64,000 bases of DNA, taken from positions 20,336,001 to 20,400,000 of the forward strand of contig OZ038378.1 of NCBI GenBank assembly GCA_964036045.1, given 5' to 3'. This DNA comes from Eutreptiella sp. 'Long Island Sound 2002'. Its lineage: Eukaryota; Protista; Euglenida. Numbering within the stretch: position 1 is the stretch's first letter; every line of letters starts with the position of its first letter. A program made the position numbers and the translations under genes. The notes beneath the pieces were generated by a model. The model was not told where the DNA came from. It searched no databases and was given only the letters and a program-made list of their open reading frames with translations. Positions 11,301 through 56,305 of this stretch are shown in pieces.

Positions 11301-11468
11301 TGCCTAGCTGCCCACATGGCCCGGCAGCCTTATGGTTGCTTGTTACCTTTTGGATTCTTTTGAATTGTGTTGGGAAATTTGCTCTACAATTTTGAAGGGA
11401 ATGGTTGTTGGTTGCGCGTAAGCATTGGCACCTAGCTCAACACAATGTGTGGAAAGTTTAATACTGCG

Positions 11469-11630
11469 TCAGGACAGCACAACCCCAAGCCATCAACAAC
11501 TCTCCGTACTGTCGCAAACTGTACTAGATCCTTGACAACACTCAACAAAAGACCAGTGATGATGCCACGGCTTCCACCTGAACAACATCCAGACCAACCT
11601 CCGAAAACAGAGCTCTAGAAGCCACCCACC
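11469..11630 (+). repeat. Dispersed ~160-bp direct repeat, copy 1 (copy 2 at 26852-27013)
   Basis: caggacagcacaacc...cagagctctagaagccacccac occurs at both sites with few differences. Confidence 0.9.
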
Positions 11631-12660: not shown

Positions 12661-13345
12661 TTACTGGGAACCAATCATTTCGGTCATACATGTCTCACAT
12701 GCCCACGATCCATGCTTTGGAGGAAACCGAAGCTTGGCACATGACAAGTGGTAAATAGCATGACAAACATCACAAGTCACAGATGCAGCATTCTTCGTAA
12801 TAGGATAGTCACAACAATAGCATTGTTGCTTTTCCTCTTTCACCTGAACTTTGCGAACCTTCGTGGGTGGCCCATCAAACCTAGCAGAGTCAAAAGGAGA
12901 TGGGATGCCTGTGAGATCTTGGCTTGTGGGGGCCTTTGCAGGTGTGGCTTGGGCTACCCATGCACACGAACGATACATCTCACGCTCATATACCATGTTC
13001 TCCTTTTCGCTTAATTGTGTCAAGGGAAAAGTAGCATAGTCCTCCTCCGCTGTGAGATCAATGACCTCGTGCTTTGGAGACGCTGTGTGCACGATTGGGT
13101 TGTTAGCACAAGGCTCCGCCTTGATAGGACTACCAAGAACAACCACAGTCTCAGCTTTAACAGCTTTAAGAGGACTAGCATGGACAACGCAAGGCTCCGC
13201 TTTTGGCTCCTTACAAATTTCCTCGTGAGGCACCTCGAGCTCCTTAGGCTTTTGGTAACGTGCAAGAATCTCGGCGGCTTTTTCAACCCCTTTAAATTCC
13301 TTGTCTTTGCGGTGATATACCAAGAGAATTTTGACTTGAACACCA
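12661..13345 (-). CDS. 5'-truncated ORF ending in a PHD finger
   Basis: C-terminus CYCC...TCDVCHAIYHLSC...GSWACETC fits C4HC3 with the conserved W. The annotated start MPRIS is supplied by the repeat at 13346-13362, so the real start is missing. Confidence 0.75.
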
Positions 13346-13489
13346 ACAGATATCCGTGGCATATGCCCGGGATATCGGCAGATATCCGTGGCATATGCCC
13401 AGGATATCGGCAGATATCCGTGGCTGCTGTATCCCGGGCATATGCCACGGATATCTGCCGATATCCTCGGGCCCTTGCCACGGATATAA
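13346..13489. repeat. Palindromic repeat cluster (right); MITE-like or terminal inverted repeat
   Basis: Two and a half direct 32-bp units (gatatccgtggcatatgccc(g/a)ggatatcggca) followed by an inverted arm ending gccacggatataa. Confidence 0.9.
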
Positions 13490-19500: not shown

Positions 19501-19979
19501 GTCTACAACGTGCGGTCGGTATCTGCAGTTAGTCGACCGCGTCTGCTTTACCAGACTGTCTCTGCAGACTGCAAAACTGTTGGAAAGCCCCCCTGCCTCA
19601 GGTCCCCCCTGTGCCAAACCCCCCCAGGGCCCAATACGCCAATCCCACTCCGTGCGCCTCATGCGCGCCCACCCCCTGTTCGCCTCATGAAGTGAGGCAC
19701 GCAGTCCCGGCGAGACTTAGGCTGGAACTTGGTCCGCGCTGGTGCTGCATGACGATGGCGCGCCCAGAGGAATGATCACGTTCACAGAGGTATCAATTGG
19801 TCGGGGCGCAGATGTGCTATGTGCAGATACCTACGGCCTCTGATACGTCTTTTTTGGACTCCAATACACCCTTTAGGAGGTGCTGGCGGTCACGCACTTG
19901 TGTTGTGCTCGTTGGGTCACTCTCCATCCTCTGGCCAGCGATTGGCTGTGTGCATCCTGACGATCCATGTGGTTTACAG

Positions 19980-20069
19980 ATTTTGTTTTCGGGGCCCAAA
20001 CGCTGAATGCAGAGGTGTATGAGCTGGCAGGAAGACCCACTGTGCTGGCCAGTCTGAACGGAACCAACG
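19980..20069 (+). CDS. Kinesin motor exon: (D)FVFGAQTLNAEVYELAGRPTVLASLNGTN(G)
   Basis: tttacag acceptor and gt donor; matches the kinesin FDxVFG...EVYE...P.V...LNG.NG segment; phase 1 joins the next exon. Confidence 0.85.
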
Positions 20070-23000
20070 GTTTGTGCTTTCTGCTGCACTACATACCATA
20101 GACCCTCTGCTGTTGCTTCTGCTTTGAGAATCAGGCAGGCAGGCTGGGAAACATTGCCCAATGCTTCATTCCATTCCATGAACGGATTTTGTTGGTGCTG
20201 TGCACATGCACGCTTGTGAGTCGTGGAATTGCAGACGGTCATGTCGTTGCTTGGTTATGCAGTTCTCATGTGGTGTGGAACAACAATGTTGGTGTGATGT
20301 GGACCCAGGCCATTTTGGGAGTTCTACCGAAGTTTTCTTTCCATTTTAGAGTCTCAAGCCTGCTCCTCTTGTACAGGGGGCCCATGCAGGACTGTTGTAC
20401 TATGGTATTGGAGAACCGACTGCATTGTTGGTGGGGTGCTCAATAATTGTGTACGGAGTGTCTCACTGGATTTGCCGTGTCGTTACACAGGGCGCAATCA
20501 GGCCAGGCCCCTGCCTCGTTAGCGCCACCCCCACCCCCTGTGTGCCTCGTCAGTGCGCCCCCCTCTTCCTGTGCACCTCATTAGCACCAAACCCCCCTGT
20601 CCACCAAACCCCTGTGCGTCAAACCCACCAAAATGTGCCAAGCCCCCCCCACCCCCCACCTCCCCCACCTCTGTGCACCTTCCTCACTCGTTTCGCTCGC
20701 TCCATACTTGCCCCCGTGCACTTTCCTCGCTTACTCAAGAGACATGCCCATGTGCACAGGTAAATGACATTAGACGATTGCTGACTAATAGCACACCCCT
20801 TGCGCCTTCTGAGCACCAACCCCCTTGTGCACCTTGTTAGCGCCAATCCCCCCCCCCCCCAGTGGGGACAGAGGAGATCAAGGAGGAACCACATCCAAAG
20901 GAGGAAAGAGACCAAGGGCTGGAGGAAGGGCACCAAAGGGAAGGGAGAGACAAGGAAGAGGGTAGGGTGGGCCCTTTTCCCTTCTTTTCTTCCTTCTACC
21001 CCTTGCTCCTTGTCCCTTCCCTTCCTCCCCTTTCATCCCCCTTTTGCGCTTGTTGTATTGCTGTTGGATATTTGGCCTTGTTCATGTGCTCTTCATCTTG
21101 TCCCCTTGCTGCTCATTTCGCGGACACTAGCACATGTTTGCCGCAATCAAATCTTACTCTCACCCTTTCTTGGTCTTACATGATGCTCTCCACCTCCCCT
21201 CTCTTCCCCTCCAACTTTTGCATGCCTATCAACTTTATCCTCTCCCCCACCCTAATCTAGTACCCTCTTGCCCGCACCACTTCCCTCTCTTTTTCTTGTG
21301 GGGGTCTTCTTTCCTCGTGAACCCCCCCCTTCCTGCTCTTTGTGCTGCTCCACTTGGGCCCCGTGCTTCTCCCTAGACTCATAGTATTATTTTTGCCGCC
21401 ATTGTTGCCGCCGCACTCTTACCTCCTATAACCATTTGGCAAGTCTGGCTTTTCTACGGCTGCATTGCAACACCCCATTGTTGCGGAACGCTTGCTTGGC
21501 TGGGGACGGGTTCGCATTTTTTTTTTGCATTTTTTTTTGCATTTTCGGGGCCACTCTTTTAGTGTGATGTTCAAGAGGAAAATTTTTAGTGTGACCTTGC
21601 ATTTGAACTAAAGTGTAGTCTTAAAGTCAATTACTGTTTGCATATCTGCCCAACAGTACCACTTTCATAGCTTACATTCTTCTTCTTGCAATAGACATGT
21701 TGGATTCTATGCCCTCCACTTCTCCTTGTGAGCCCCATTCTGATGATGGAACCAACACCCTGCCCCGGCGCAAAGTACGTGGTAAGGGGAAAGGTGGTGC
21801 TGGTGCAAAGTATTGCACCATGAGCCCTTGGAAGCGGAAGGAACAATTTCCCGGTCATCTGCTAAGTGTTTGCAGCAATGATCTTGATATCGAAGTTTAA
21901 GTGGTGGTTGAGATGATGAGGAAGAGGGATAAGGCTCGGGTTGAGCGCCTCCTGGAAGCACAGGCAGAGGCTCTACCTCAAAAAGCCGCTATGAGGCAAC
22001 CGAACCTACACTCCACAATTGCTTCACACAACAACAAGAACAAGGCCGCCGATTGGAGGCACAAGTGAGCTGGCATTGGTGACATCCTTCCGAAGCACAA
22101 CGTGTTCTCGATGATCAATCTTCTTTACCGGTCATTGTCTTGAGTTCAAGTGCTGATGCATTCAGCGTGTGGACACTGATGGCCAGAGCGTTTTGGTTTG
22201 GAGACCGTCCCTCCCAATATTGGTGGCACTAGGTGGACAACCCGGTGAGATGGTGCTGATTGGGTGGTCAAGCTATCCAACTATGGGTGAATAGTCGGAG
22301 GCAAGGAATCACGAAACACATCGATACGCCAAGCTCATGGGATTGGGCACCTTGTGGGTTTGGGAAGGGATATGGGGTAGAGGCAATATTGGGGCTCTGC
22401 CCCTTCTTGCCGAGGGAGTAACATCCCTCCTCTTGAACCACAGTAGAAGGGTGTGATTCCCTACCACGCTTTGCATGTTGAGCCGGTTCTGTAGTCTCTT
22501 GAAACGAGCGATGGTGTCAACAAATCAACATGTGTCTTGACAAACATAGGGGTTTGTGGGAGGCATACTCCATTACAAGAAAATCACATTTTTTTGTCGC
22601 ATATTTTGTCGCCTTTTCCGCATTTCCCCGCATTTACTAACCCCCCCCCCCCGTGCCGATATCACTTGGTGCACCATACCACTCCCTCCTTGGCCCTCAA
22701 TGGCCACAGTACAATCTACATGCATACTTGGGGCTCCATGTTTTAGACCACGCTTCTGGGCCCACTGTGCTTGCCCTTCCGTTGTCACTTATGCTTCACT
22801 CTCGTTGTCCTGGTTCCATTTGTGGCTTTCCTCTTCCACGTTTGCTCCTCCCACCGGGCCCAACCACCGGGCCCACCATTTTTCTCCTTCCCACCTCCAC
22901 ACAACACCCTTCCTCCATCCCCGCCACTACCAGTGGCACTTCCTCTCACATACCTGCCATGTGTTTGTGATATTGGTGCACCTCCCCCGGCTTCTTTCTC

Positions 23001-23120
23001 TAGATTGCTACACACTTGCTTGCCACCTCCTTTGCCCAAGGCCGTAGTGGTGTAGGCCTTCAAGCCACCTTCCTCTAGGGCACTTGCCACCCCTTCTTCT
23101 GGTTGGGGAGAGGTCCAACA

Positions 23121-23440
23121 TTAGACCACTCCCACCGCCAAGCTCTTATCTAGTACGATGGACCACAATGTTTGGTCTATTGTGTTGAGGGTGCACAAGT
23201 TAGACAAGTTAGACAATACCGGCTCATATCCTTGATGTGTGTGTATCCAACCCACTAGTTGTCCTCCTAACCCTGCACCCCAACTCATCACTTCCGCTAA
23301 TTCCGTGTTTCCCACCACACATTGTGTATGTGTAACCCCCCTACCTTGACTCTACTCCCTATCTTCTTGCCCTACATCTCCTTTGCTTGTCCCGCTACTT
23401 CCAATACTGCTTGGTTCCATTTCACCGGTAGGTCCTCTTG
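23121..23440 (-). pseudogene. JAB/MPN (JAMM, AMSH-like) metalloprotease remnant inside a kinesin intron
   Basis: AKEM*GKKIG...LHIHNV, frameshift, then GNTELAEV...QLVGWIHTHQGYEPVLSNLSNLCT, comparable to AMSH ETCG...ITHV...GWIHTHPxxxxxLSxxD. One stop, one frameshift, and a 9-bp duplication (tctaacttg) where the Asp ligand should be. Confidence 0.65.
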
Positions 23441-26334
23441 TAGTTCTCCTTTCATTGCTCTTGCCGCGCTTCCCCTTGGTTGGGGAGAAGGGGCCAAAGG
23501 TGCAAGGTGGGGAATGAGAAATAATGGGGTGAAGCTCGTAGGGGTGAAAAGGGGAGTGGTAGAGGAGATCCACAAGGACAAAGTACAGATACTTTTGGTA
23601 GGAGGGGTACATCAGCTGGCGATGGTCTTGGAGGAGGTGGAGGCGGTGGATGTGATGTCTCCCGACGGAGTTGGGGCTTTTTGGAGCAGTTGGGATCAGG
23701 AGTGCACCCATGGAGGAAGAGGTAAAAGCGGCATACAAGAAGTGGGTGTTACATTTACACCCCAACAAGAAAAAGGAATAATGCAGCCAAGGCAGCCCAA
23801 CTCTTCAAGGGGTTGAATGTTGGCTACACAGCATGGAAGGAAGCGGAAAGGAGGGCACTAGTAGACCTCATTTGGTCCCAATAAATACATATTGGTCCCC
23901 GACGTTGAGTAGTTTGATGTCCAACCCCTCCTCCTTTTTTCCTCCAAGATTTTGGCCCCCGAGATGGTGCGCTTGTCGTGTGTATGCCACCTGAACTTTA
24001 CTTGGAAGGTCAAGCTACGTGCCCTTTGAGACCCTATGTGGTGCCATGCCCTCTCATTCCTTTGGGTCCAGACCAGTTGGACCTGAAGTATTTGGGGTTG
24101 AACTAGGGTCCGCCCTTGGCACTATAAAAGTGGTGACCTCAAGCGCATGGGTGTTGGGGGATAGGATTTGGGCACTAGAGATATTCATAATTAGGGAAGG
24201 GATCAACTTCACAATGGATGACCCAACGAGGTTGATTTATAACCTACATTGGGCAAACACAGGTGCTGCTCTAGTGGGCATATGGCAATACTCGGGGAAT
24301 TAGGGTAAGGGAAGCAAAGGAGCATGCCATGGAATGATTGTGTGGTCTATCTGGTTGTGGGCCAACAGGTAGGACTTATCCATAATTTTCAAAAAACATA
24401 AGGGTCGATGGATATGTGAATCCCACTTCATGGAAAGGCCAACAACCGGGATTCACACCAGGATGCGGCGGCCCTATAGGGTGATAAAGAAGCAGATAGT
24501 GGAGGGGAAGCATCAAGGCCACGGACTTCGTGTGGCCCCACGTCAAAAAAGGCAATTGGCAAGTTCCGGGAGGCCGTGGCCAAGTATCCCACGAGGTGTG
24601 TACCCCCAAACTTGGAACCCGGCCAAAAATGGCATTGTTTGGGAGGCCAAAGGCTCAAGTACCTCAGGACACCTTGCAAAACAGCGGCAAGTCAACTGAA
24701 TGGCGAGTATGCCAAAGCAAGTAACATCTCAATTTGCAAACGTTCTCCGTTGTATCCCGGCGCATGTTGGAGGAGGTGCGTCGGCTGCCGCAAGTGGCAC
24801 AACCCGCAACTACTACTACAACACCAATCCCCTCCCATCACCCTACTTCCACATTGACCCCCCACCCATCACCCCGGGTGGCGCCCATGCCACACGAGGG
24901 AATGGACACACAATACACACACCCCGGACCTAGGGGGAGGGCCTGGGTGGTGGGGGACACAGGATGCGCTCGCCACAAGGAGGATTGAGCGCGAGAAAGG
25001 GCAGGTTGAAGGTCGTTATGTGCCCCCATCGGGAAAGGGACCTTGCAAGTGGACATCTTGGGGTCCAAAAGCCGCCGTTGGGGCAGGGTTCCCCCACCGC
25101 CGGTATGGAGTGTCCACTTGGATGCACCTAGCCAATGGTGAGGGCCGTTGCCCTCCTCTGTGTGGACCCGACACAGAGCTGTGAAATGGGGTCAGTCGGG
25201 GGCTCCGTTGGCACAACCTACCAAGGGAAAGGAAGGGTGAGTATGGAGGTAAGGATAGGCCAGGCAGACAGAGGGAGGGCATAGGGTGGTGAGAAGGCAA
25301 TGGGCGCCACCACCTATGGAGGGAAAATGTTCAAGGAAATGGCAAGGGTAAGGGGCTACAGGCCAATAGGCGCCGCCAGCTGCAGACGGCAATACAACCA
25401 AGTGTCATGCCACCCCCCCCCCCCCCCCTGTGGATCCGGCGAAAGTTGTTGAGAATTTTTGTACACATTGATGGAGGTGTGTCAACTACACAGTGGAAAA
25501 ACACCTCCATTCCTGCCTACCAACCAATTTTTTTAACTCAAATAAGGGGTGCTGTTGCAGTTTGTATTTATGCACATTTACACATATTTCAACAAAGGTG
25601 CTGGTATGCGCACCAAGTGATTTATTGTTGCTGAAGCAAGATCCACAACCGGAATATGACAAAGAGGACACAGCCACAACCCATATACTTGCATGTGTGT
25701 CCCCCTGATACGGCAAGGGATACATGGCCACAATCCACACCCTTGTAGGTGTGTGTGGCGTGTGGCCCAGGGACCGCAGGGATACTCAGGCACAAGCCAC
25801 ACACTTGCATGTATGTGGACCTGATACGGCACGGAACGAAGGAACACAACCCGCACACTTGCATGTGTTTGCCCCCACACCATACTGCATGTACCAGCTG
25901 CTGTACACACGTGGACAATGTTCCATGGCAGTTTGCTTGTGGTGCATTTATTTGAGTGCGTTTTCTCTAAAATGAGGAGTGCTTCGCATGCAACACAGAG
26001 GGACAAGGGGCAATACTTGCTGCAAAAACAGGAGGAGGAAATTCAAGTGGAAGCCATTCTAGGGCATCACCAATTCGCGTTTACGGGGGGGGGGCTCCCA
26101 TGCCAGGCAACCTTAGGGCGGGCGGGGGGGGTCCCTAAGAAGGGGGGGGGGGCTTGCCATGGCATGGGAGGGTGCAATTGGTCATTTGCAATTTTTTTTG
26201 ATTTTAGCAATTTTCACCAAGGGGTTTTTGTGGTGCGGCAGGGCAGGAGGGCTTTATTGTGCCGGCGTGTGCAATCATTGGCATCCCTGCGACAGCGTAC
26301 ACAACCCATATGCTGTGTGCAAATTTTGATGCAG

Positions 26335-26453
26335 GTGCAATTCTGTGCTATGGGGCCACTGACTCTGGCAAGACGTACACAATGATGGGCGGTGGTGGTC
26401 AGGAAGGAATGATCCCAATGGCCATCCGCGACGTGTTTTTGCATGTGAATGAG
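26335..26453 (+). CDS. Kinesin motor exon with P-loop: (G)AILCYGATDSGKTYTMMGGGGQEGMIPMAIRDVFLHVNE
   Basis: GxxxxGKT inside the YGxTxSGKTYTM kinesin signature; cag acceptor and gtaatc donor. Confidence 0.95.
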
Positions 26454-26851
26454 GTAATCTTCTTGCCCCAGCCCAGCGGTTAGGGTGGCCAGTGCAGCTG
26501 CAACTGCATATTTGCATTGCCGGCTGTTGATGGGAACATTTGGTGTCTGTGTCTTGTGACTTCTCTTGATGAAGTTGCATGCCTATGCCCGTGTCCCGGC
26601 CTACGTCCACAACTGTACTGCTGATCGTGGATGGCATTGTCAGGCGAATGAGGGGGCTGGTAAGAGGGTGGATTTGGGTTTGGGCTTCCTGGTGAGGGTT
26701 GCCCAAAGCTGGTGAAAGCCCTATGTAAGAGCTGGTAGGGTTTGGCGAGGCTGCAATCAAGGAGTTGCAGGGGTTCAGCTCCACAACCACTCCAAAATCC
26801 TCGGCTGTTCTCGAATGACCGAACAACCCTCTTTGACCCTTGTTCACCGCG

Positions 26852-27013
26852 TCAGGACAGCACAACCCTAAGCCATCAACAACTCTCCGTAACCGTCGCA
26901 AACTGTACTAGATCCTTGACAACACTCAGCAAAAGACCAATGATGATGCCCACGGCTTCCAACTGAACAACATCCAGACCAACCTCCGAAAACAGAGCTC
27001 TAGAAGCCACCCA
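26852..27013 (+). repeat. Dispersed ~160-bp direct repeat, copy 2
   Basis: Near-identical to 11469-11630. Confidence 0.9.
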
Positions 27014-29345
27014 CATGCCCCTGCGACCGCCTGTTCTCCCGCGCGTTTGGACTCGGGGACCGCCCTGCCTCCACCTGTGGCTGTTTCTTCAAGCGACCTC
27101 CATGGCGCCAAAGGAGTGGCCATTAGGGTCAAATAGGTTAGTACTCCAGAGGGCGGTGGTGGTTCAACCGTCAGGGGCAAGAAGGTTACCGGCAATGCCT
27201 CCGGATGTCTGCGTTGGTTCAATGGTGTTTATTTTGGTGCGGAGAGCCCTCCATCGTATCCAGAACAGCAAGAAAGGACATCACCTACACAAGTCAATTG
27301 CATCTGGAAGAAAAAAAAAGAAAAGAAATCGTCTAAAAACGGGTCAATTTGTGGATTTTGTGCCCTGGACCTGTTTTGTTTAGCGGCATTTGTTGAATTG
27401 ATCTCTACAGTCTGCTTCAACAATGTGGGTCCAGGGCCAGGCGTCCAGCCATGCATACCAACTGGCAATGCCATGTACAGTGTGATGGTGGAAGCAACCA
27501 GTGATTTCAGCAATTAAAATTTAGAACACAGGAGAATACCAGTGCGTGCCACCAACGGTAGCCGGCCGCGGGGCATCGTGGGTTTGGGAACAGCATATAC
27601 CGTGCAGACGCCAATATTTTGCCAAATATTTAATTCCAGGGTGTTTTTTTCTGAGCACAAAAAAAAAACAAGAAACGCAAATATTTGAAATGATTTTGGT
27701 GTTCCGGACAGAGGATTTCGCAAAAAATTAGGTTGATTAAATAAATAATCCGGAGAGTGTAGGGTTTGTACCGTTTGTGAACATTCGTACAGGCATGATG
27801 CAAGGATGTGCAAGGGGAAAAAATGGTTAAAGTCCGTGCTCCCCGATCCAGTCTTGCTGTCCTAGAGTAGGGATCCCTGAGATCTGGATTTTGCACACTG
27901 ACCACTAGGATATTGCCTGTACCTGACATAGCAGTGCTCAAGGACCATATACAAACTGAGGGGTAATTTTTTTTCCAAACAGCAGCAGTGAGCATACATT
28001 ATCAAACGCATAATGGCATTTGGACGAAGAATAATCGCAAAAAATAAATTTATTTTAGGTGCTCAATACACAGATTTCGGCTTGCAATTTCAAAAGCATC
28101 GCAATTTTTTTGGGGGGGGCTGTTTGGTGGCAAAACTAAAAAATTTGCTAAATTTCAATTGTTTTTATTTTCGCAAAATATTCGTGTTTTAGGAATATTC
28201 GTGTTTGCATGGTATGGGGCATTAGGTAATGGCTGCTCGTTGAAGATATTTGCCTTTTCCTACTAAGTGCGCAATCTCAGCGTCCCCTTAGGCGTGCAAT
28301 ACTTTTCCTTAATGAGGGATTTCAATCCATTGAGAATCTTTGGGAGCCCTCAGAAGACCACTCACTGCTGGGCATTCACTGGTGGTATATACTACAAAGC
28401 AACCCTCAGCAATGCTCAGCAAAAGTCTCAACGATGCTTTCTAAATCCCTGGACCTCTCATATCTTCCATACCCCTTCACGGAGCTCTCCCAACTCTGCT
28501 ACCCCCATACTTCAGGTTTCCCCTGTAGACCCTTTTCGCATACAATAAAAAAATATGGTCATACGGCATCTCCAACAGAGCACTGAGTGGCTGAAATCCG
28601 AGCGACCATAGTGCGTAGTGCAAATGTATTGGTCCATCTACCGGACAGCCAAAGCAATGGACAGGTGTGGTCAAGCAATGGACAAACAATTTTCGAGCCA
28701 TCAGCCATTACCTTTTTGCTGTGCACGAGTAACCTATACTAAAGTGCAGGGAAGGTGTGGGGGCGGCTCTTCTCAATACCCATGGGTGGCTTCTTCAGTG
28801 CACAGTCTGCGGACCTACACTTCATATGGTCATTCCACGTGGCAAAGGCACAATCCTGCAGATGGCGCTCCGTGTCTCTTGCACTGCAGGGCACTGCAGG
28901 ACATGCAATGTCTTTTGCATAGTTTAGAGACAACGTTATGGTTGCTTCCGCAGGCCCCCACCACTGCAATGAGCAATGTGTGCGGCACGTTAGGCGAAAC
29001 TTGGAGCCTTTGGGCTCTCTGTCCATGCATTGAGGAACCTAACGACCCCTGCACAGGCGCCTGTATGGGATAGCACTTACAAGCCCTGGGCATTTGTGTG
29101 TGTTGCGCCAATGGTACAGGAACCTGCATTGCACACCCATCCACAAATACTGCCAAGTGGACCTTCAAGTTAGGCGTGCCGCTGCAGTCGCATGGGCTGT
29201 ACAGGATATGGCGCTAGCTATACCAGTGTTCTTACCAACTGTCTTCCGTTTGTAACATCCTGGGTTGCCCTACTCATCAGCGCTGCAGCTTGAATGAATA
29301 TGGGCCCCAACAACAGCAACAACAGCAACAACAACATATGCATGC

Positions 29346-29588
<243 letters not shown>

Positions 29589-29636
29589 CAAAGGCATGGG
29601 CGCGGTGCTGGGGTTCCGCCTGTATTTATCTCGCAG

Positions 29637-29765
29637 CATTCGAATAAGCGTTGGGAAGTGAAGGTCAGTTTTATGGAGTTTTTGAACGAGTCCATTCGGG
29701 ATTTGGTGTATGACAAAGCGTCGCGAAATGCAGTCGCTTCCATTCTCCGAATCTATGAAGAGGAG
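29637..29765 (+). CDS. Kinesin motor exon: HSNKRWEVKVSFMEFLNESIRDLVYDKASRNAVASILRIYEEE
   Basis: Matches VxVSYLEIYNExIxDLL...LxIxE; cag acceptor and gtattt donor; phase 0 at both ends. Missed by the ORF track. Confidence 0.92.
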
Positions 29766-30380
29766 GTATTTTGTATGGAGTAATTTGTGTGCTTGCGTCA
29801 TATGCTGTGCGTGCACACGTACGCGCGTGTGTGTGTGTGTGTGGCATCAACGAGTGTGTCAGAGTGCAATGCCTATGCCGTGCAACGTTGTGACTGTGTT
29901 GTTTATTGACGGGGCTGATGCAACAGACCTGCACAATCCTGCACTACCTTGTGACTGCAGCCAGCTGTTTTGCAGGCATCAGAAGGGTATGTGTACGGAT
30001 GCCCATTTTGAACCCGCTCTGTGTGTATGTGCTTCACTACTGTGGCCAGGCAGTAGTGCGGCACGCAATGTTGGCACCACCCAGCGCCCAAATGCTCCCT
30101 TTCCTCTTCTCCTTTGCCCGGTATCTCAACTGCTAAAGAGCTTCTGCCTTGGGAAGTGCAGGTCGTGCACGGCACCTGAGAATTTTCGAAATTTTGGCCT
30201 TTTCTAGTCAACTTCTGTCGTGTCTGGGATGCGTTTGGATCATCGTTTGGTGCCAATACGGGTGCTCTAGCATCCATGGGGACCCATGTAGTGGCTGCTA
30301 GGCCCATGTAACCAGGGCCGTGGGTCCCCCTGCACCGCCCGAAATTGCTGTTTGAAGCCTATTCAGTGGCACCTGACAAT

Positions 30381-30570
30381 CACCTCAAAGAGGGTTGTTA
30401 ATTCAGCACAGGCACGAGCGCCATAAGAACCCCCCCGTTTTTGAGGGTGTTCACGTAGCATACCCCAATGCATGAAATTGGATGTTTGACCCCTTGCAAA
30501 GTCTTCATTTTGGGAGGCAAACTGTGCCCCCAATGAATTTTTCGATTTTGGCCCCTCAGCCCCCCCTCGG
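30381..30570 (+). repeat. Diverged dispersed repeat; second copy at about 36911-37095
   Basis: Shared tcacctcaaagag...atgaaattggatgt...tttttcgatttt...cccc blocks in the same order. Confidence 0.75.
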
Positions 30571-31164
30571 CCCCTTCGCCGCAGCTGAATGCTGCTTTCT
30601 AGGGGGGCTCCAAATGGAAAAAAAATGACCCCACCATTACCCGAAGCGGGCAAAATGGTTCGAACCCCCCCGTTTTCCCCACAACTGATCTGGGGCACAA
30701 AAAGTGTTTTTGCTCCATGATAAGCCTGTTTTGACTCTATTTGGAGGCGGAAACATCAACAGAAAAGGTTCAACAACATGGTCTTCCCCCCAGACCCTCC
30801 ATGATTATTTGGGAGGGGCCAAAACGGTTTTCTGAACCCTGTTTTGACCCCTCTGCCTTGCCGAAGGCACTGGAATTCAAGCAGGTCTTTGCTCAACGAT
30901 GGGGGGCTGGGGTGGTCCACAAGCGCTGGTTGGGTCCCGTGTAGTACAACCCATCTCCAGTGCCACATCTAGTAGAGCCTTTGATGAAGGTCACATGCCG
31001 ATCGCACTCGGTAGGGGACGGATTCCGGTCAAAGGTTGGGTGGTGTTGGGTCCTGCCTTACGAGATTTTGCAGGGCAGGGTCCTAGCCCCCCGGGACTGC
31101 GAGCCATCGAAGGTGGACCCGCCCCACAGGGGCACAACCCAAGGCTGCATGGCTTGTTTTGCAG

Positions 31165-31317
31165 AAGAAGGGGGTAGTCGTTTGGGGTGCCAAGGACATG
31201 GTCGTGGAATCGGAGGCTCAGGCGCTGAAGATTTTGGAGACGGGGCTCGAGAACCGCACAGCCAAAAGCGCCGGAGCAGAGGGACACAATCCGTGGTCCA
31301 CCGTGGTGTACCGCTTG
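31165..31317 (+). CDS. Kinesin motor exon (switch I region): KKGVVVWGAKDMVVESEAQALKILETGLENRTAKSAGAEGHNPWSTVVYRL
   Basis: Matches GVxVxGxxExxVxS...LxxGxxxR; cag acceptor and gtgcgt donor; NxxSSRSH is replaced by EGHNPWST. Confidence 0.9.
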
Positions 31318-32398
31318 GTGCGTGTGCGCGTCCCAAGGCAGGGCAGGCAGGGCACCCCCCCCCCCCCCTCTGCTCTGGTGGCCCGAGAGCAAACGGCTGG
31401 GGGGCGGCCTGGGCCGGGCAACCTGTCAGCCATCCGCACCTTTCCATCCTACCGCAGGGGAGGCGGGCATGCGTACCACCGTACCACATGCCCATACGGT
31501 ACAGTCGAGGGATCCAACACATCACATCCACAGAGGACACCGCCATGACTTCTGGCAATCATACGCGCAAAGTACACAACATCCGTGGGCATCCGCAGCA
31601 GACAGGGCAGGTGCCCTGACCAGGGCTACGGATGCTATCCGGGGTGCATCCTTGCACGGGGTGTGAAGCACAGAAACCAATTGCGCCGGGCCATGACACT
31701 GAGCAAATCTGGAGGCCAACAGCAGCCCAAATCCCCCTATCCCTCATCCCCACTTGGCTGTCGCACGCGCTGCTGCCTAGGCCCTGTACACCACTCGGCC
31801 CATAGGCGTGGGCAAAAACGGGGAGGCCTCTTGCGCCCCATATGTGTCAATGACCGCCAGCAGCATACAGGCCTCCGACGCAAACGAGCAGCGGCGGGAC
31901 GGGTGGCCCGGTGCAGCTGAGAGGGCACCCAGAACAGAAACGCAAGCAGCCTCGACCACCGCGGCACATGCTGCACCACCCTCAGGATGCGGTTGTGTGC
32001 GGAACAAGCCGTACGTGCAGTACCCTTGACCACCGTGGTCTGCCCCCAGCAGTCGACCACAATGATGTATCACATACTCCTTGCAGCTCACCTGTCCAAT
32101 ATGCAGGCATTCGTGTGACACAGATCTGCCCCCCCCCCCCTTGCCGCGCTTTGGTACCTTCAAGTGCCTTTGAATGGTTGCAATGCAGTAGCTCTTGGTG
32201 GGTGGCTGTGTCAAACAGGGAAAGTCTACCAACGGTTCCACCTACTCTTTCGCTTAGCCCACCTGAATTCGGTCTACCCGCCTGCCGCGCTTTCCCTGTC
32301 TCTCCCTTGGGAACTCGTCAGTCATATGTCAGGGCCTAGCTAGGGACCATTTACCTGGAGGCCGGCTGTGCCAGTGTGCCCTGTTTGCGCTCCTGCAG

Positions 32399-32461
32399 AG
32401 CATCGAGAGCACCTTTGAGGTGGGCAAGAATGATGCATTCAAGACATCGAGCGCAAATCTG
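32399..32461 (+). CDS. Kinesin motor exon: SIESTFEVGKNDAFKTSSANL
   Basis: ctgcag acceptor and gtgcgt donor; 63 nt, phase 0/0. The IES after switch I is reminiscent of kinesin-7/CENP-E. Confidence 0.8.
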
Positions 32462-32800
32462 GTGCGTTTGTGACGTGCCTGGCCGGTTGTGCTGCAGTCG
32501 CTGTTGTCCCATAGACGGGGTTGTTTTGGGGTGTTGGTGTGCCATTGGCTGCACGATCAGGTGATCTTTTCGTGCGTGGGGCATGTGTTGCCTGGGCCGT
32601 GTATTGTGGGGGCGAGTCCGAGGGAGAGGCGTGCGGCTGTGAGAGGGATAGACTTTGGGCTGTTGGCGGGAGGACGCCAGGGAGAGGCGTGCGGCTGTTG
32701 GGCGCGAGGGCGAGGCCCGGAGCTGAATATCTGGTGCAATCTGTTGTCGGGCGCTGTGTTCCAGACGTGTGCCTCTCCTGCTGCTGCCTCCGTGCTGCAG

Positions 32801-32946
32801 TATTTGGTGGATTTAGCGCGATCCGATTCGAATCCAAACGCTACGTTAAGTCTTAAGTCAAGCGATGGTAGCGCGGACGCGGAGTCCCGAAAGGCCGTGC
32901 AGACTCTGACCACCATCGTGACGAAACTCAGTCACGGAGACCGAGT
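32801..32946 (+). CDS. Kinesin motor exon (switch II region): YLVDLARSDSNPNATLSLKSSDGSADAESRKAVQTLTTIVTKLSHGDR(V)
   Basis: LVDLAxS motif and relay helix; ctgcag acceptor and gtatgt donor; phase 2 matches the next exon. Confidence 0.9.
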
Positions 32947-33865
32947 GTATGTGCGCTGCGCCGCCAGTGTGGGATTGAGGGTGGAGGTTGAGCGGCTGCT
33001 CCCAGGACCAGCGGATGCCAAACTGGTCCGCCAGCTTATGCATGCATCGCACCGAGGCGCCCTCCGTTCCCAAGGAGATGCGGCGTGTATGTGTATGTGT
33101 GTGCTGGGGGGGGGGGTGAATTCCCCATTTAAGGGGGCGGGCCATGGCATGCTTCGTGTGCCATTTGGCCTCAAAAGTTCTTCTGTGACGTGGCAACGCT
33201 TGGGAGGTGGAGTTGTGTTCCGTGTCAGATTGTGTGTGTGTGTGTGTGTATGTGTGTGGCCAATGGTCTGTGCGACATTTCTGGCAACACATACCATTGT
33301 CAAGTGTTGCTAGTGCGAGGCATGACCAATGCTGGAATTCAGCCATCTCCTTTTAGACCCCTCCCCTCTTTCAGGAAGCACTGCATGTGAGGCCTGCTGG
33401 CAGGAGAGGGGATGCTGAGGGGCATGATGCTGCAGTGTGCCGCAGTGGGATTAGCATTCCACCCCGACCACTGCCATGCACTGCCGATGACCTGACGTGA
33501 GGGTAGCAGCATCCCTGTAATCCTTTGACCCCGCGAAACCTCCACCGCCTTGAGTTAGGGCAGGAACGGTGCCAGAAGCAATAAACGATGTGCCACAGTT
33601 CCGTGCCCCAAGTGAACCGGTCCCTGAAACACTATTGTTATACTCAGACAAATGCCTCGCTGCTCTGTTTGCCCGCTTTACGCGTGCGCGTGCCAGGCGC
33701 GCGCCTATGGGTTGGGTTGTCTGCGTGGACGTGTATTTATTCGTGCGCGCGCGCGCGTGCGCATGCAAATGGTTCGTGCGTGACTTCCACGCATTTCGTC
33801 CACGAAGCAAAGGGCTGTCGGTGCTCACCGGCATCAGTAGTGGCTGCCTCTTTGCTGTTCTTCAG

Positions 33866-33931
33866 TGCACTGCCGTACAGAGAGAGCAAGTTGACCCGAG
33901 TCTTGGCCTCGGTTTTAGGAGGAAACTGCAG
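33866..33931 (+). CDS. Kinesin motor exon (L12): (V)ALPYRESKLTRVLASVLGGNC(R)
   Basis: Canonical PYRxSKLTRxLxxxLGGN; ttcag acceptor and gt donor; phase 2/2. Confidence 0.95.
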
Positions 33932-36038
33932 GTCATCTCCCCTTCAGTTCACTCCAGCCATGCACAGTGCCGTGTCCAAAGGAACAGCTCGTCGTCGTTT
34001 GTGCACACTCCTGAGCCGCCTACACAGCTCTTGACCTTCACAGAAATATTGCCGAGCGCAGTGCGTCACTCAGCCACATGCCGGATGCAGGCCCCTCTAG
34101 ACCCCCTCCCCCCTCTTCCGAATTCCAAGCCCCCTCCGTTACCCTCATTCCCTAAAAGTGCCAAAACACAGCCAACTCCAGGCCATGTTGGTGACAAATG
34201 CATTGGGCAAGCGGTTCTCTTGGAAGTCATGGTGAAGAGAGGGTGTGGCCCGTATCGTGCTGCTCCCCCAAACAAATCAGGGCCGTCCTTCTAGGACTGC
34301 GCGGATGTGTCTGCAGCCCTTTTGCAGCGCAATGCCCCTCCTCAAGACCAAAAAGGGGCGCGCACATGCGACACACGGCCCCAATCTGTTTGGAACGGGG
34401 GAAGGGGGGGCAAGAGAACGGTGGGGACGAAGGGATTACACGGGCCCCCACCAGGCTCTTTTGGGGAAGGGGCGGCGGTGTTCTGTGTGTTTGTACCAGG
34501 CCTGTCTTTACTGCCGAAAGCGAAATGGTCGGACTCCAGTACAACTGGACCACAACGGAGCATCGCCCGGTCGGAAGCTGCTGTTGATTACTGGCCAACC
34601 AGCGTAGGTCGAGCGTGAACCACCATCCACTCTCCTCCAGTCACCAGCAGCCATCAAATGCCACCCACCGTTGGGTAACTGCGACCTGACCGCAAAGCTT
34701 CAGGTGTATTCCAGTGCAAAAAAAAAAGGGAGTATCGACAAAAAAGGTCCTTTCCAGGCGCACTCCACTAGCAACACCATGGGCAGAATGCCTGGGAGTA
34801 CGATGCACCAGTGATGTTGGGGGTGGTGGAAAGCACTAAACACCACGTGGTCTGGGAATTGCTCAATGTGAAGCTCCAAGCGCTATTAGGGGAATGGACG
34901 GCATACTGGCAGAACACTGCAACCGTGAGCAGTGGAACAAATATTCCATTTTCATTGGTCAAACTGTGCACCCTCACAACACCCCAGTTCCATCGTCAGT
35001 GGCATTGGCACCAAACAGTAAGGTGTGAGCTCCTGCTAGCTTTCCTTGCTTTGGAACACTGGAGACCAAATGGTCATCAAGTATTGCTCTACAGGTGATT
35101 GTGTGGCGGCATCGATTGCCAGGTACCCCTACGAAGAAGAGAAGTGAACACAACTGTCGTGGCATGGACAGCACGGCTTGTCAACCATCATGCACCAAAC
35201 TCGCGGATATTTCGTTGGTGGCATGAACACAACAAACCTGTTAGTCAGGATAGCCTGGTAACTGTGCCCACGCAAGACAGGATAGCCTGCCCTCTGAAAA
35301 CATGTATATATTTGCTGGCATGGGCAAGACAGCCTGCTGGCTATCCTCAAGAACGAAGAATGCAGGAACAAAGTGGCAACATGGAAAGGACAGCCTGTCA
35401 GCTGTCCCCACTTCAGGACCTTCCGTAAGGATCCAGATTTTTTTCTTTTTTCTTTTCGGGACAGGGATTGTGGATATCGCCCCGTTAAGGGGTAACCGAC
35501 AGCTGTTGGAGGGTAATTGTGTGCATGCTACTTTGTTCGTGTGAGGGAGGGATTGCCCCCTCCTCCCCACCTTCTTCCCTCATGTACGGCCCTGCCCCAC
35601 TTGCTGGATGGCGGGTGTTTCTTGGTGGCGTGGAGAAGACACTGTGTTTGCTGTGTCCAAGACGAAAGATTTGCTATGAAACATGTGCTCGGCGACAAAT
35701 GCCAACACGAATGCTGCAAAAAGTAGGGTCTCGTGGGAATGGATTTGTCCATAGCCAACCCAATCTAAGAGGTGGACAATGTTGGAAACGGCCTTGGATC
35801 TGCAACCAGCGCAGGTGCCCCGGCCTAGTAACCAAGAGTCGCCCCGCAACGCACACAATTGACCACCACCAAACCTGGAGGTCACGCACAAGACATGGCA
35901 CTGGGCATTGGTTGTATTGCATGGTACCCCGCCAGCCTTTATGGATCACCCTCCCCTCCCTTCAATTGACCATCTGCCTGCCCCTGCCCTCTTTTCCAGT
36001 GCAAGCTGGCTCCCAATGATCCAATTCTTGTTGTGCAG

Positions 36039-36156
36039 GTGCTCCATCATCTGTCTGCTGCTAGACCATGACACTTGGCACAATGAGGCTGCCAGTACTC
36101 TGCAGTTTGCAGCGCGGGCGAAGAGAATGGTCAATTTTGTGACTGCCAATCAGACG
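36039..36156 (+). CDS. Kinesin motor exon (alpha6/neck): (R)CSIICLLLDHDTWHNEAASTLQFAARAKRMVNFVTANQT
   Basis: Matches ExxSTLxFAxRAKxIxN; gtgcag acceptor and gtgtgc donor. Confidence 0.92.
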
Positions 36157-37254
36157 GTGTGCATACCTGACGCTTGTGGCTGTCGCGGACTCGTGGTGTT
36201 TTGGGAGGTGTCCTCAAGTGGGCCAGAGACGGCCTTGCACTAGGAACTTCGGAGCTGCCCACCTTGCAGAGCTGGATCCTATGTCCGGAGGCGGGATGTT
36301 AATTGTACTGATGGAAAGTCGGAAGCAACCATAAGGGCTGTTGGGCACCATAGGAGGAGCTAGCCCGCCTCCCTGTGCACCCCCTCAGCCTCCGCCTGGA
36401 AGACAATCCTCTTGCGCTGTTTGATTTTGGCGCTTGCAGTTGCCAGAGAATATGATGCACTCGGAGTATCTATCATCATATCTGCCTTTTCTTTGCCATT
36501 TTCAGCCACAACACCACATGTTTGCGTCAATTTCATACCACTCTCTTTTGCAAGGTGAGCAACGCTCCGTGGGACGGGGCCACTTGAAGGGATGCTGCAA
36601 GCCTCATAGTGCTCGCGCCCAGCAGGAACCATGGAAAAGCCTCTGGTTGTGAGGCCTGCGAGCGGATACCTGACAATAACTCCCAGTTGAAAAGAAAGCG
36701 TGGCACCAGCCTGAGCACCTGCAAGCATGCAATGGCATTCCTTTCATCAGCGGTGGGGTGCAATCCTCTGGCGGGGGGTTCGGCGGCGGTTCGGTCCACC
36801 GGCAACCTGTCAAGCTGAATCATGGGTGTCTGGCTGAATTGGTGGGCCGGCATCACCAGATGGTTCCCACCTGTGCCTGTGCATGTGCTTGTACCTCAGC
36901 CTGTGTCCAAATCACCTCAAAGAGAGGTTGTTAGATCAAGCGCAGGCACAGACACCATTACCGCATTTATTGGGGTTATTCACATAGCACACACCAATGT
37001 ATGAAATTGGATGTCTACCCCCTTGTAAAATCATTATTTTGGGAGACAAAATTATCCCCCAATCAATTTTTCGATTTTGACCCCTCCAACCCCCTGTACC
37101 CGTGTACCGCTTTGTTGGGGGCTGGGGTGGGGTTGGAGATGTCAAAACTTGGTGGGCCTATAGCCGCCACTGTGTGTTGATCCAGACCCAGGTCCTAGAG
37201 AACTTTTTTCTTATATGAGGCCCCCCTGACCAATTACAGGGTCCTAGACCCTAT

Positions 37255-47689: not shown

Positions 47690-48724
<1,035 letters not shown>

Positions 48725-55825: not shown

Positions 55826-56305
55826 TTGTAACGCGCACTAGGGGCTCTTTGTACTTATGGCTCGTGTGTGGGACCGCAGTGGGACCTCTTTGAAAGCTTG
55901 GCCTGTGTGCGTGAGTGCACCGGGGCAACACAGAAATCCTTGCCACTGTGCGGGAGCGCACTGGTGCTTCTGTGAAGTCATGGCCCTGGTGCGGGAGCGC
56001 GTGGGGGCCCCTTTGAAGAAATGGCCCCTGTGCGGGAGCGCACAGCGGCCTCTTTGAAGTCATGGCCCCTGTGCGGGAGCGCACAGGGGCCTCTAGGAAG
56101 TCATGGCCCTTGTGCAGGAGCGCACATGGGCTTCTTTGAAGTCATGGCCCTTGTGCGGGAGCGCACCGCGGGCCCCTTGTACTTATGGCCCCTGTGCGGG
56201 ATCGCAGTGAGACCTTTGTGAAGTCATGGCCCCTGTGCCGGAGCGCACTAGGGCTTCGCTGAAGTCATGGCCCCTGTGCGGGAGCGCACTAGGGGCCCTT
56301 TGTAC

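What the first reader, a model, noticed from the sequence alone, without database searches (positions are those of the whole stretch)
19980..36156. Kinesin with intact P-loop and microtubule loop but both switch motifs rewritten: candidate pseudo-motor
Seen: eight exons splice cleanly and in phase with no stop, so the gene looks intact. Switch I NxxSSRSH reads ExxNPWST and switch II DLAGSE reads DLARSD, while GxxxxGKT and PYRESKLT are kept. Known: the switch I Arg / switch II Glu salt bridge and the switch II Gly are needed for ATP hydrolysis. Here Arg is Trp, Gly is Arg and Glu is Asp. Inference: a nucleotide-binding but non-hydrolysing microtubule tether or regulatory partner, analogous to Vik1/Cik1, Smy1 or Costal2, possibly derived from kinesin-7. 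The coordinated loss on both switches suggests selection rather than decay.
Basis: partly seen in the sequence, partly recalled or inferred. Interest (0 to 1): 0.72.

Follow-up and report, generated by a model that had tools for sequence, protein, structure and literature searches.

The report
Orphan Euglena kinesin, rewritten catalytic switches
A single-copy, intron-rich gene in a Euglena genome encodes a very divergent kinesin motor domain that keeps its ATP-binding loop but has lost the residues needed to burn ATP; sequence statistics say this arose under selection, not decay, but its start, tail, expression and relatives could not be found.

Summary
On the + strand, seven exons (I could not find an eighth) have GT..AG borders. 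They match the kinesin motor profile in order, from position about 46 to the end. The P-loop (GATDSGKT) and L12 (PYRESKLT) are kept.

Evidence for selection rather than decay:
- 14 of 14 invariant residues are kept in the P-loop, alpha3 and L12, against 6 of 20 in switch I, switch II and alpha4 (p = 4e-5).
- Neutral drift to the same loss leaves an open frame in only 1-2% of simulations.
- All seven exons have Euglena coding codon usage in frame. The two switch exons score highest.

Open points:
- No exon for the first ~45 motor residues (beta1, RxRP) was found in 40 kb upstream, and no tail was found.
- One donor site is ambiguous.
- No RNA evidence could be obtained.
- No paralogue or orthologue of the switch exons was found anywhere searched.
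- The kinesin-7 link rests on the P-loop exon alone.

Verdict: probably a lineage-specific, non-hydrolysing kinesin-like protein. That is a new member of a known kind (KIN-B, Vik1, KIF26, Costal2). It may be a truncated relic today.

The parts
19980..20069 (+). Exon E1 (beta2 to alpha1: FVFGAQTLNAEVYELAGRPTVLASLNGTN). It is entered in phase 1 after the acceptor tttacag and left in phase 1 before GTTTGT.
   Evidence: Sequence read. Pfam profile 46-79; local HMM 49-84; codon log-odds +4.2 in frame and negative off frame.
19938..19969 (+). Alternative 5' end. An in-frame ATG at 19967 lies in the same open frame as E1, with a TGA stop at 19958-19960. It is preceded by a pyrimidine-rich tract and a CAG at 19936-19938 that could take the spliced leader. 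This would give a motor truncated before beta2.
   Evidence: Sequence read; ORF 19967..20101. Inference only: no RNA evidence.
26335..26453 (+). Exon E2: P-loop and alpha2 (AILCYGATDSGKTYTMMGGGGQEGMIPMAIRDVFLHVNE). Acceptor gatgcag, donor GTAATC.
   Evidence: Pfam 42.5 bits, E 5.4e-11, profile 76-116. Best solved structure is CENP-E, 32.3 bits. All 10 invariant residues that fall in this exon are kept; the eleventh of the P-loop block (G78) lies in E1.
29637..29765 (+). Exon E3: beta4 and L5-L6 region (KVSFMEFLNESIRDLV...). Acceptor ctcgcag, donor GTATTT, phase 0 at both ends.
   Evidence: Pfam profile 116-149. Best solved structure is KIF13B, 18 bits. 3 of 5 invariant residues kept.
31165..31329 (+). 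Exon E4: beta5, alpha3 and the rewritten switch I (ENRTAKSAGAEGHNPWSTVVYRLVRV). Acceptor ttttgcag. The donor is ambiguous: the exon may end at 31302, 31305, 31317, 31323 or 31329, all in phase 0.
   Evidence: Pfam profile 157-205. KIF15 alignment across switch I. Unique in the genome. Highest codon log-odds, +17.2. Switch I keeps 1 of 7 invariant residues (read without gaps).
32765..32946 (+). Exon E5: beta7, the rewritten switch II (LVDLARSD), L11 and a rewritten alpha4. There are two in-frame acceptors, with exon starts at 32765 and 32801. The first gives the canonical spacing of about 25 residues between switch I and switch II. Donor GTATGT, phase 2.
   Evidence: Local HMM 230-276 at -0.6 bits, in order but not significant. 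No solved-structure match. Unique in the genome. Codon log-odds +16.5. Switch II keeps 4 of 7 and alpha4 1 of 6 invariant residues.
33866..33931 (+). Exon E6: L12 and alpha5 (ALPYRESKLTRVLASVLGGNC). Acceptor ttcttcag, entered in phase 2. Donor GTCATC, phase 2.
   Evidence: Pfam profile 276-298, 22.3 bits. 59-68% identical to other Euglena kinesins in this stretch.
36039..36156 (+). Exon E7: beta8, alpha6 and the start of the neck linker (CSIICLLLDHDTWHNEAASTLQFAARAKRMVNFVTANQT). Acceptor tgtgcag, donor GTGTGC, phase 0. If the donor is not used, the frame runs on to a stop at 36241-36243.
   Evidence: Local HMM 296-335. KIF1A alignment, 12.9 bits.

Best explanation
The locus is a single-copy gene of a Euglena gracilis-type genome. 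It is lineage-specific, interrupted by long conventional introns, and encodes a highly divergent kinesin-like motor domain.

Shown:
- The domain is in the same order as the kinesin motor from beta2 to the neck linker.
- It keeps the phosphate-binding P-loop, alpha3 and the L12/alpha5 tubulin contact.
- It has replaced the gamma-phosphate sensor: switch I Ser-Ser-Arg is Asn-Pro-Trp, and switch II Gly and Glu are Arg and Asp.
- It has also replaced most invariant residues of the relay helix alpha4.
- The replacements are confined to that one functional unit, while the reading frame, the splice sites and the codon usage are maintained.

Inferred: the protein evolved under purifying selection as a kinesin fold that can no longer hydrolyse ATP by the canonical mechanism. 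It would act as a static or regulatory module. The likeliest form is a non-catalytic subunit paired with another protein or an active kinesin, or a nucleotide-independent microtubule or cargo adaptor. It would not act as a motor.

Not shown: whether it still binds nucleotide or microtubules, what lies N- and C-terminal of the motor core, and whether the gene is expressed today.
For: - Motifs and the ordered match to PF00225.
- Canonical GT..AG borders with consistent phases at five junctions, and in-phase options at the sixth.
- Audit of invariant residues against 18 canonical motors: 11 of 11 kept in the P-loop/alpha2 block, 2 of 2 in alpha3, 1 of 1 in L12. Only 1 of 7 is kept in switch I, 4 of 7 in switch II and 1 of 6 in alpha4. 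Fisher's test, 14/0 against 6/14, gives p = 4e-5.
- Simulated unconstrained substitution up to the same loss of invariants (about 215 changes in 858 nt) gives a mean of 4 stop codons. An open frame survives in 1.3-2.4% of runs. A given block of 11 invariants survives in 0.1-0.3%.
- Codon log-odds trained on ten other Euglena kinesin ORFs are positive in frame and negative off frame for all seven exons. The sum is 62.5, against -61 +/- 20 for stop-free intron pieces (0 of 2000 reach it). The two switch exons, which no longer resemble kinesins in sequence, score highest.
- The other Euglena kinesin loci read through these regions (L005, L006, L010 and L013; L004 reaches only part of switch I) have canonical or near-canonical switches (ASRSH or SSRSH; DLAGSE or DLAGSD), so the rewriting is specific to this gene.
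- Established knowledge: the switch I Arg to switch II Glu salt bridge, the switch I serines and the switch II Gly are required for microtubule-activated hydrolysis. The same Gly-to-Ala change is used as a rigor mutation in trypanosome KIN-A (PMC10987093).
Against: - No RNA evidence. My one run search used a 9.9-kb query in which exons are only about 6.5% of the words. It returned DNA holders and three tiny putative RNA runs with none of the words. Reads laid on 31100-37099 were DNA contigs only.
- No exon for motor profile positions 1-45 (beta1, RxRP adenine pocket) in 40 kb upstream.
- No recognisable neck or stalk exon downstream.
- No paralogue of the switch exons in the 2.28-Gb genome.
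- No relative in 1.84 billion representative proteins beyond generic P-loop similarity. None in two word searches or in metagenome contigs. Conservation across species is therefore untested.
- The selection tests speak about the gene's history, not its present state.
- The grouping of invariant positions into functional blocks was chosen after seeing the data.
Confidence: 0.5

Rival explanations
1. Truncated relic. The locus is what remains of a kinesin-like gene that has lost its 5' exon(s) and tail. It is no longer expressed as a protein, and the open frames are a leftover.
For: - No N-terminal exon in 40 kb upstream and no tail exon downstream.
- A stop lies 20 nt upstream of E1 in the same frame.
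- The gene is a singleton without detectable relatives.
- No RNA holder was found.
- The genome is 2.28 Gb and rich in repeats. High-copy elements sit in the introns, and 5,458 dispersed copies of the spliced-leader sequence hint at much retroposed material.
Against: - An open frame over 286 codons, with intact GT/AG at every border examined, is expected in only 1-2% of neutral histories of this depth, before counting indels and splice sites.
- Losses are confined to one functional unit (p = 4e-5).
- Codon usage is still coding-like in every exon.
- Any inactivation must therefore be recent compared with the long period in which the rewritten switches were kept in a working gene.
- The failure to find terminal exons is weak evidence. 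The N-terminus of kinesin motors is poorly conserved, tails are low in complexity, exons here are about 40 codons long, and Euglena also has nonconventional introns.
Confidence: 0.3
2. Gene-model error. The real mRNA does not use the rewritten parts of E4 and E5. Other exons, or nonconventional introns without GT..AG, supply canonical switch motifs, and the gene is an ordinary motor.
For: - The E4 donor and the E5 acceptor are ambiguous.
- Euglena has nonconventional introns that no tool here predicts (own knowledge).
- A peptide ending in a canonical SSRSH is encoded on the + strand in intron 2 at 26975-27010.
Against: - An HMM scan of every open frame of 12 codons or more on both strands found no other switch I or switch II piece, apart from the SSRSH element.
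- That element lies between E2 and E3, out of order. It has no splice sites, exists as two 95% identical copies with 1-bp indels, and its second copy lies upstream of the gene.
- E4 and E5 have the strongest coding signal of all exons.
- With the 32765 acceptor they give the canonical spacing between switch I and switch II.
Confidence: 0.08
3. Unconventional but active motor. The domain still hydrolyses ATP, using other residues or a partner's residues in place of the canonical switch I and switch II set.
For: The P-loop and its flanks are fully conserved. This conservation would have no obvious purpose if nucleotide played no role.
Against: Six of seven invariant switch I residues are replaced. 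So are the switch II Gly and Glu and most of alpha4. Single substitutions at these positions abolish microtubule-activated ATPase in every kinesin tested (established knowledge; a rigor mutant is used in PMC10987093).
Confidence: 0.07

Closest known systems
KIN-B of Trypanosoma brucei, the degenerate kinesin of the kinetoplastid chromosomal passenger complex, partner of the active KIN-A
   Same: It is a kinesin-fold protein in the same phylum (Euglenozoa) with lost switch I and switch II and a changed alpha4. It is kept by selection as a non-motor subunit (PMC10987093).
   Different: KIN-B has also lost the P-loop and many alpha4-L12 residues, and its motor domain does not bind microtubules. 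Here the P-loop and L12 are intact. That paper found no KIN-A or KIN-B homologue in euglenids. No sequence link was found here, because no KIN-B sequence was available to compare.
Vik1 and Cik1 of budding yeast, the motor-homology domains that pair with Kar3
   Same: They are non-catalytic domains with a kinesin fold, working as the second head of a heterodimer (own knowledge).
   Different: Vik1 has no nucleotide-binding site at all and no recognisable kinesin sequence motifs, and its domain is C-terminal. Here the P-loop is kept, the sequence is still recognisably kinesin, and the neck-linker-like end suggests an N-terminal motor.
KIF26A/KIF26B (kinesin-11) and Costal2/KIF7 (kinesin-4 relatives)
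   Same: They are animal kinesins with recognisable motor domains that bind microtubules but have little or no motility, and are used as scaffolds or regulators (own knowledge; the KIF7 structure paper PMC3266853 was listed but not read).
   Different: They belong to defined families with long tails and conserved orthologues. KIF7 keeps canonical switch motifs. The Euglena gene has no assignable family, no known tail and no known orthologue.
Kinesin-7 / CENP-E
   Same: The P-loop exon (SGKTYTMMG..G.IP.AI.D.F) aligns best with CENP-E, at 32.3 bits without gaps.
   Different: No other exon prefers kinesin-7. The genome's own kinesin-7-like gene (L010, whose best named hits are CENP-E and KIN-7) is only 45% identical in the P-loop exon, which is no closer than other paralogues.

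Membership tests
Kinesin motor domain superfamily (Pfam PF00225) | Significant match to the family profile | tested here: met
   The P-loop exon alone scores 42.5 bits, above the gathering score of 29.3. Five pieces hit the profile in order from 46 to 298, and seven do so with a local HMM.
Kinesin motor domain superfamily (Pfam PF00225) | P-loop GxxxxGK[ST] | tested here: met
   GATDSGKT at 26352-26375.
Kinesin motor domain superfamily (Pfam PF00225) | Switch I NxxSSRSH | tested here: not met
   It reads EGHNPWST. 1 of 7 invariant positions is kept.
Kinesin motor domain superfamily (Pfam PF00225) | Switch II DxxGxE | tested here: not met
   It reads DLARSD: Gly is Arg and Glu is Asp.
Kinesin motor domain superfamily (Pfam PF00225) | N-terminal beta1 with the RxRP adenine-binding motif | tested here: not met
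   Not found in 40 kb upstream by HMM or by pattern. It may be too divergent to recognise, or absent.
Kinesin-7 (CENP-E) | The motor domain groups with kinesin-7 over its whole length | tested here: inconclusive
Exon by exon, only E2 prefers CENP-E. E3 prefers KIF13B, E4 KIF15 and E7 KIF1A, while E1 and E5 match nothing.
Kinesin-7 (CENP-E) | Long coiled-coil stalk after the motor | tested here: not met
   No coiled-coil-like or coding-like exon was recognised in the 10 kb downstream.
Catalytically inactive kinesin-like proteins ('pseudo-motors': KIN-B, Vik1/Cik1, KIF26, Costal2) | Kinesin fold or homology with catalytic residues lost | tested here: met
   for homology and losses. The fold itself was not predicted.
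Catalytically inactive kinesin-like proteins ('pseudo-motors': KIN-B, Vik1/Cik1, KIF26, Costal2) | Maintained by selection, that is expressed and conserved | tested here: inconclusive
   Indirect support comes from uneven retention, open-frame survival and codon usage. There is no transcript, orthologue or polymorphism data.
Catalytically inactive kinesin-like proteins ('pseudo-motors': KIN-B, Vik1/Cik1, KIF26, Costal2) | No ATPase; acts through binding (to a partner kinesin, microtubule or cargo) | not testable with these tools
   This needs the protein and an assay.

The most novel reading that the evidence does not exclude
Euglenids may have evolved, independently of kinetoplastid KIN-B, their own non-hydrolysing kinesin subunit. 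It would keep a nucleotide pocket as a structural or sensing element and pair with an active kinesin or a signalling complex. One candidate role is the unidentified localisation module of the euglenid chromosomal passenger complex, for which no KIN-A, KIN-B, Borealin or Survivin homologue is detectable (PMC10987093). This gene would be that subunit.
Probability: 0.05. Interest if true: 0.7.

Novelty: new member of a known kind. Interest (0 to 1): 0.35.

Why it matters
Dead-enzyme relatives of motors are a recurring way to build adaptors and regulators, and most known cases come from animals, yeast and trypanosomes. A euglenid example that keeps the P-loop and L12 while rewriting exactly the gamma-phosphate sensor and relay helix would be a natural dissection of the kinesin mechanism. 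It would show which parts are needed for a non-motor role. It would also add to the poorly charted kinesin repertoire of Euglena, which has at least 76 P-loop-bearing loci in this genome. As it stands, the value is limited because expression, the ends of the gene and any orthologue are unknown.

Tried and rejected
- RNA evidence. The single run search used too long a query, with exons only about 6.5% of the words. It returned DNA runs and three tiny putative RNA runs holding none of the words. The single read-laying run therefore showed only DNA contigs.
- Polymorphism or divergence for a dN/dS-like test. Contigs labelled organism B are identical to the window, and so is ENA assembly ERZ25074135 over 6.2 kb.
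- Orthologues or spliced products. Word searches on the switch II and switch I exons found nothing. The representative search with the P-loop exon found only the window's own 74-aa genomic ORF at 100% and generic kinesins at 65% or less. Two metagenome scans found nothing.
- Control for those searches. A canonical Euglena kinesin (L010) finds only a genomic ORF of the same organism. The collection seems to lack Euglena transcript-derived proteins, so the missing spliced product says nothing about expression.
- Paralogues. The switch exons are unique in the genome. The nearest P-loop exon is 51% identical, and its gene (L004) shares nothing else.
- N-terminal exon. An HMM on all open frames of the window and of 20 kb further upstream, plus RxRP-like patterns, found nothing.
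- Tail exon. Composition, codon log-odds and an acceptor/donor scan over 10 kb downstream gave only a weak candidate at 43832-44086, with log-odds 10-12, within the noise.
- SSRSH element in intron 2 as a displaced switch I exon. Rejected: it is out of order, has no splice sites, is a two-copy local repeat with frame-breaking indels, and the match is marginal (8.4 bits).

Full report
**What the window is.** The window is G000:C1:20336001-20400000 of a 2.28-Gb assembly in 2,317 contigs. It occurs 5,458 times in the genome and never in the reversed control. There is no copy in the window. So this is a Euglena gracilis-type nuclear genome. Spliced-leader trans-splicing, and both conventional and nonconventional introns, must be kept in mind (own knowledge).

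**Checking the observation.** Stop-free pieces around them hit Pfam Kinesin PF00225 in order:

| Piece | Profile positions | Bits |
|---|---|---|
| E1 | 46-79 | 11.5 |
| E2 | 76-116 | 42.5 (E 5.4e-11) |
| E3 | 116-149 | 17.5 |
| E4 | 157-205 | 12.4 |
| E6 | 276-298 | 22.3 |

The switch II piece and the last piece gave no Pfam hit. A local HMM built from 18 canonical motors (taken from the hits) places all seven pieces in order at 49-84, 81-120, 118-149, 159-195, 230-276, 276-301 and 296-335. The switch II piece scores only -0.6 bits.

Reading the DNA gives seven exons with GT..AG borders:

| Exon | Coordinates |
|---|---|
| E1 | 19980-20069 |
| E2 | 26335-26453 |
| E3 | 29637-29765 |
| E4 | 31165 to about 31329 |
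| E5 | 32765 (or 32801) to 32946 |
| E6 | 33866-33931 |
| E7 | 36039-36156 |

- **Phases.** They agree at E1/E2 (1), E2/E3 (0), E3/E4 (0), E5/E6 (2, restoring a Val codon) and E6/E7 (2, restoring an Arg codon).
- **E4/E5 junction.** This is the weak spot. Five GT sites in phase 0 lie between 31303 and 31330, and two in-frame acceptors exist. The 32765 acceptor gives about 25 residues between switch I and switch II, as in canonical motors. The 32801 acceptor would leave too few residues for the beta6-beta7 hairpin.
- **Exon count.** I could not find an eighth exon.

**The motifs.** Read without gaps against canonical motors, switch I (T..N..SSRSH) is A..E..NPWST. Switch II (DLAGSER) is DLARSDS. 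The P-loop is GATDSGKT and L12 is PYRESKLT. Alpha4 is the relay helix and the main tubulin contact, and it keeps 1 of 6 invariant positions. 'Microtubule loop kept' is therefore only half true.

**Is it decay or selection?** Three tests address this.

1. *Retention of invariant residues.* Of 40 positions that are at least 94% invariant in the 18 canonical motors, 39 are covered by the exons. Of those, 23 are kept and 16 changed (plus the ungapped reading of switch I).
   - Kept blocks: P-loop/alpha2 11 of 11, alpha3 2 of 2, L12 1 of 1.
   - Rewritten blocks: switch I 1 of 7, switch II 4 of 7, alpha4 1 of 6.
   - Intermediate: E3, 3 of 5.
   - Fisher's test, 14/0 against 6/14, gives p = 4e-5.
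   - Uniform neutral decay does not produce this pattern. The P-loop and L12 stayed constrained while the gamma-phosphate sensor and relay helix were released or remodelled. The caveat is that I grouped the positions after seeing the data, though the groups are the standard functional units.
2. *Survival of the open frame.* I evolved two real Euglena kinesin coding sequences of the same length by unconstrained point substitution until 16 of 39 marked residues had changed.
   - This took about 215 substitutions and produced on average 4 stop codons.
   - An open frame survived in 1.3-2.4% of runs. A given block of 11 marked residues survived in 0.1-0.3%.
   - Indels and the splice dinucleotides were not modelled, so the test is conservative.
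3. *Codon usage.* Log-odds were trained on ten other Euglena kinesin ORFs against this gene's introns.
   - They are positive in frame and negative in both other frames for every exon.
   - The sum, 62.5, lies six standard deviations above stop-free intron pieces of the same lengths (-61 +/- 20; 0 of 2000 reach it).
   - E4 and E5 no longer resemble kinesins in sequence, so they cannot profit from the family-biased training set. They score highest.

Together these say that the rewritten switches were carried for a long time by a gene under selection for a protein product.

**What is missing.**
- *The 5' end.* E1 begins in phase 1 and needs an upstream exon. The first ~45 positions of the motor (beta1 and the RxRP adenine pocket) were found nowhere in the window or in 20 kb further upstream, by HMM or by pattern.
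- *An alternative 5' end.* The open frame of E1 holds an in-frame ATG at 19967, just after a TGA stop. It is preceded by a pyrimidine tract and a CAG at 19938 that could take the spliced leader. That would give a motor truncated before beta2, which is hard to reconcile with a stable kinesin fold.
- *The 3' end.* Downstream of E7 no convincing exon was found. If the E7 donor is not used, the frame stops at 36241.
- The gene is therefore not shown to be intact.

**Expression.** It could not be tested. My only run search used a 9.9-kb query in which exons make up about 6.5% of the words, close to the tool's threshold of one twentieth. It returned DNA holders. The reads laid on 31100-37099 were DNA contigs identical to the window, including those labelled organism B. 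This was my planning error. It leaves the central prediction open.

**Relatives.**
- The switch I and switch II exons are unique in the genome.
- The P-loop exon has at least 76 matches in the genome. The next best is 51% identical, and its gene shares nothing else with this one.
- The other Euglena kinesin loci that could be read through these regions have canonical or near-canonical switches.
- Outside the genome, 1.84 billion representative proteins hold only the window's own 74-aa genomic ORF at 100%, and generic kinesins at 65% or less. None of those aligns with E4 or E5.
- Two word searches and two metagenome scans found nothing.
- As a control, a canonical Euglena kinesin (L010) found only an identical genomic ORF from an ENA assembly, followed by kinesin-7/CENP-E proteins of other phyla. 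Euglena transcript-derived proteins therefore seem absent from the collection, and the lack of a spliced product is uninformative.
- The ENA assembly ERZ25074135 is identical to the window over 6.2 kb, so no polymorphism is available.

**Family.** Exon by exon against solved structures:

| Exon | Best match | Bits |
|---|---|---|
| E1 | none | - |
| E2 | CENP-E (next hit 27.9) | 32.3 |
| E3 | KIF13B | 18 |
| E4 | KIF15 | 15 |
| E5 | none | - |
| E7 | KIF1A | 13 |

The kinesin-7 idea thus rests on one exon, and the gene is best called an orphan kinesin.

**Comparison with known systems.** Catalytically dead kinesin-like proteins are a known kind.
- In the same phylum, T. brucei KIN-B has lost the P-loop, switch I, switch II and many alpha4-L12 residues. 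Its motor domain does not bind microtubules, and it serves as the partner of the active KIN-A in the chromosomal passenger complex. Neither protein is detectable in euglenids (PMC10987093).
- Vik1/Cik1, KIF26 and Costal2/KIF7 are further examples (own knowledge).
- The Euglena gene differs from KIN-B and Vik1 in keeping the P-loop and L12. It differs from KIF26 and KIF7 in having no assignable family, tail or orthologue.
- It works like a pseudo-motor by inference. Membership of any named family was not shown.

**Verdict.**
- It is overstated on the exon count and on the gene being intact.
- Expression, the ends of the gene, nucleotide and microtubule binding, and kinesin-7 ancestry remain open.
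- I put about 0.5 on a still functional, lineage-specific pseudo-motor and about 0.3 on a truncated relic of such a gene. The rest is split between a gene-model error and an unconventional active motor.
- This is a new member of a known kind and of moderate interest.

Noticed in passing
window 26846-27014 and 11463-11629 (+): A 169-bp element occurs exactly twice in the 2.28-Gb genome, and both copies are in this window: one in intron 2 of the kinesin gene, the other 8 kb upstream of E1. The copies are 95% identical with two 1-bp indels. In one frame it encodes ...QTNLRKQSSRSH, a canonical kinesin switch I motif (8.4 bits against the motor HMM). It is out of order for an exon and has no splice sites. 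It is probably a coincidence, but an odd one beside a kinesin that has lost its switch I.
   Followed up: partly
window 12661-13362 (-): A 233-aa ORF with a C-terminal PHD-like zinc finger. The hits (zf-HC5HC2H 25 bits, PHD 18.6 bits) are all below the Pfam cut-offs. It is probably a separate gene or a transposon protein upstream of the kinesin.
   Followed up: partly
window about 52900-55850 (+ and -): Long open frames (up to 728 aa) are made of a degenerate repeat of about 30 residues (...CNALPHCPGAVGSGTPAMHCHTA...). They have no Pfam match, and both strands are open. This looks like a tandem DNA repeat rather than a gene.
   Followed up: no
window 32100-32299, 35900-36040, 36900-37099; also 30378-30564: High-copy dispersed repeats lie inside the introns and just downstream of E7. 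Summed contig depth is about 300 to 10,000 times the single-copy level. The element at 36910-37094 has a 78% identical copy at 30378-30564.
   Followed up: no
window 29300-29590 and 47600-48800: Very long (CA)n/(TG)n microsatellites, up to about 1.2 kb. The first ends about 50 nt upstream of E3.
   Followed up: no
G000, whole genome: The 24-nt spliced-leader sequence occurs 5,458 times, dispersed on both strands of the chromosomes and not only in tandem SL-RNA gene arrays. This could mean large numbers of dispersed SL-RNA genes, or retroposed copies of SL-capped mRNA.
   Followed up: no
L010 = G000:C1:3721442-3724543 (-): A canonical kinesin-7/CENP-E-like gene with a 549-aa uninterrupted frame and intact motifs. 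It contrasts with the heavily interrupted orphan gene. Many other Euglena kinesin loci also have long uninterrupted frames, up to 2,192 aa.
   Followed up: partly
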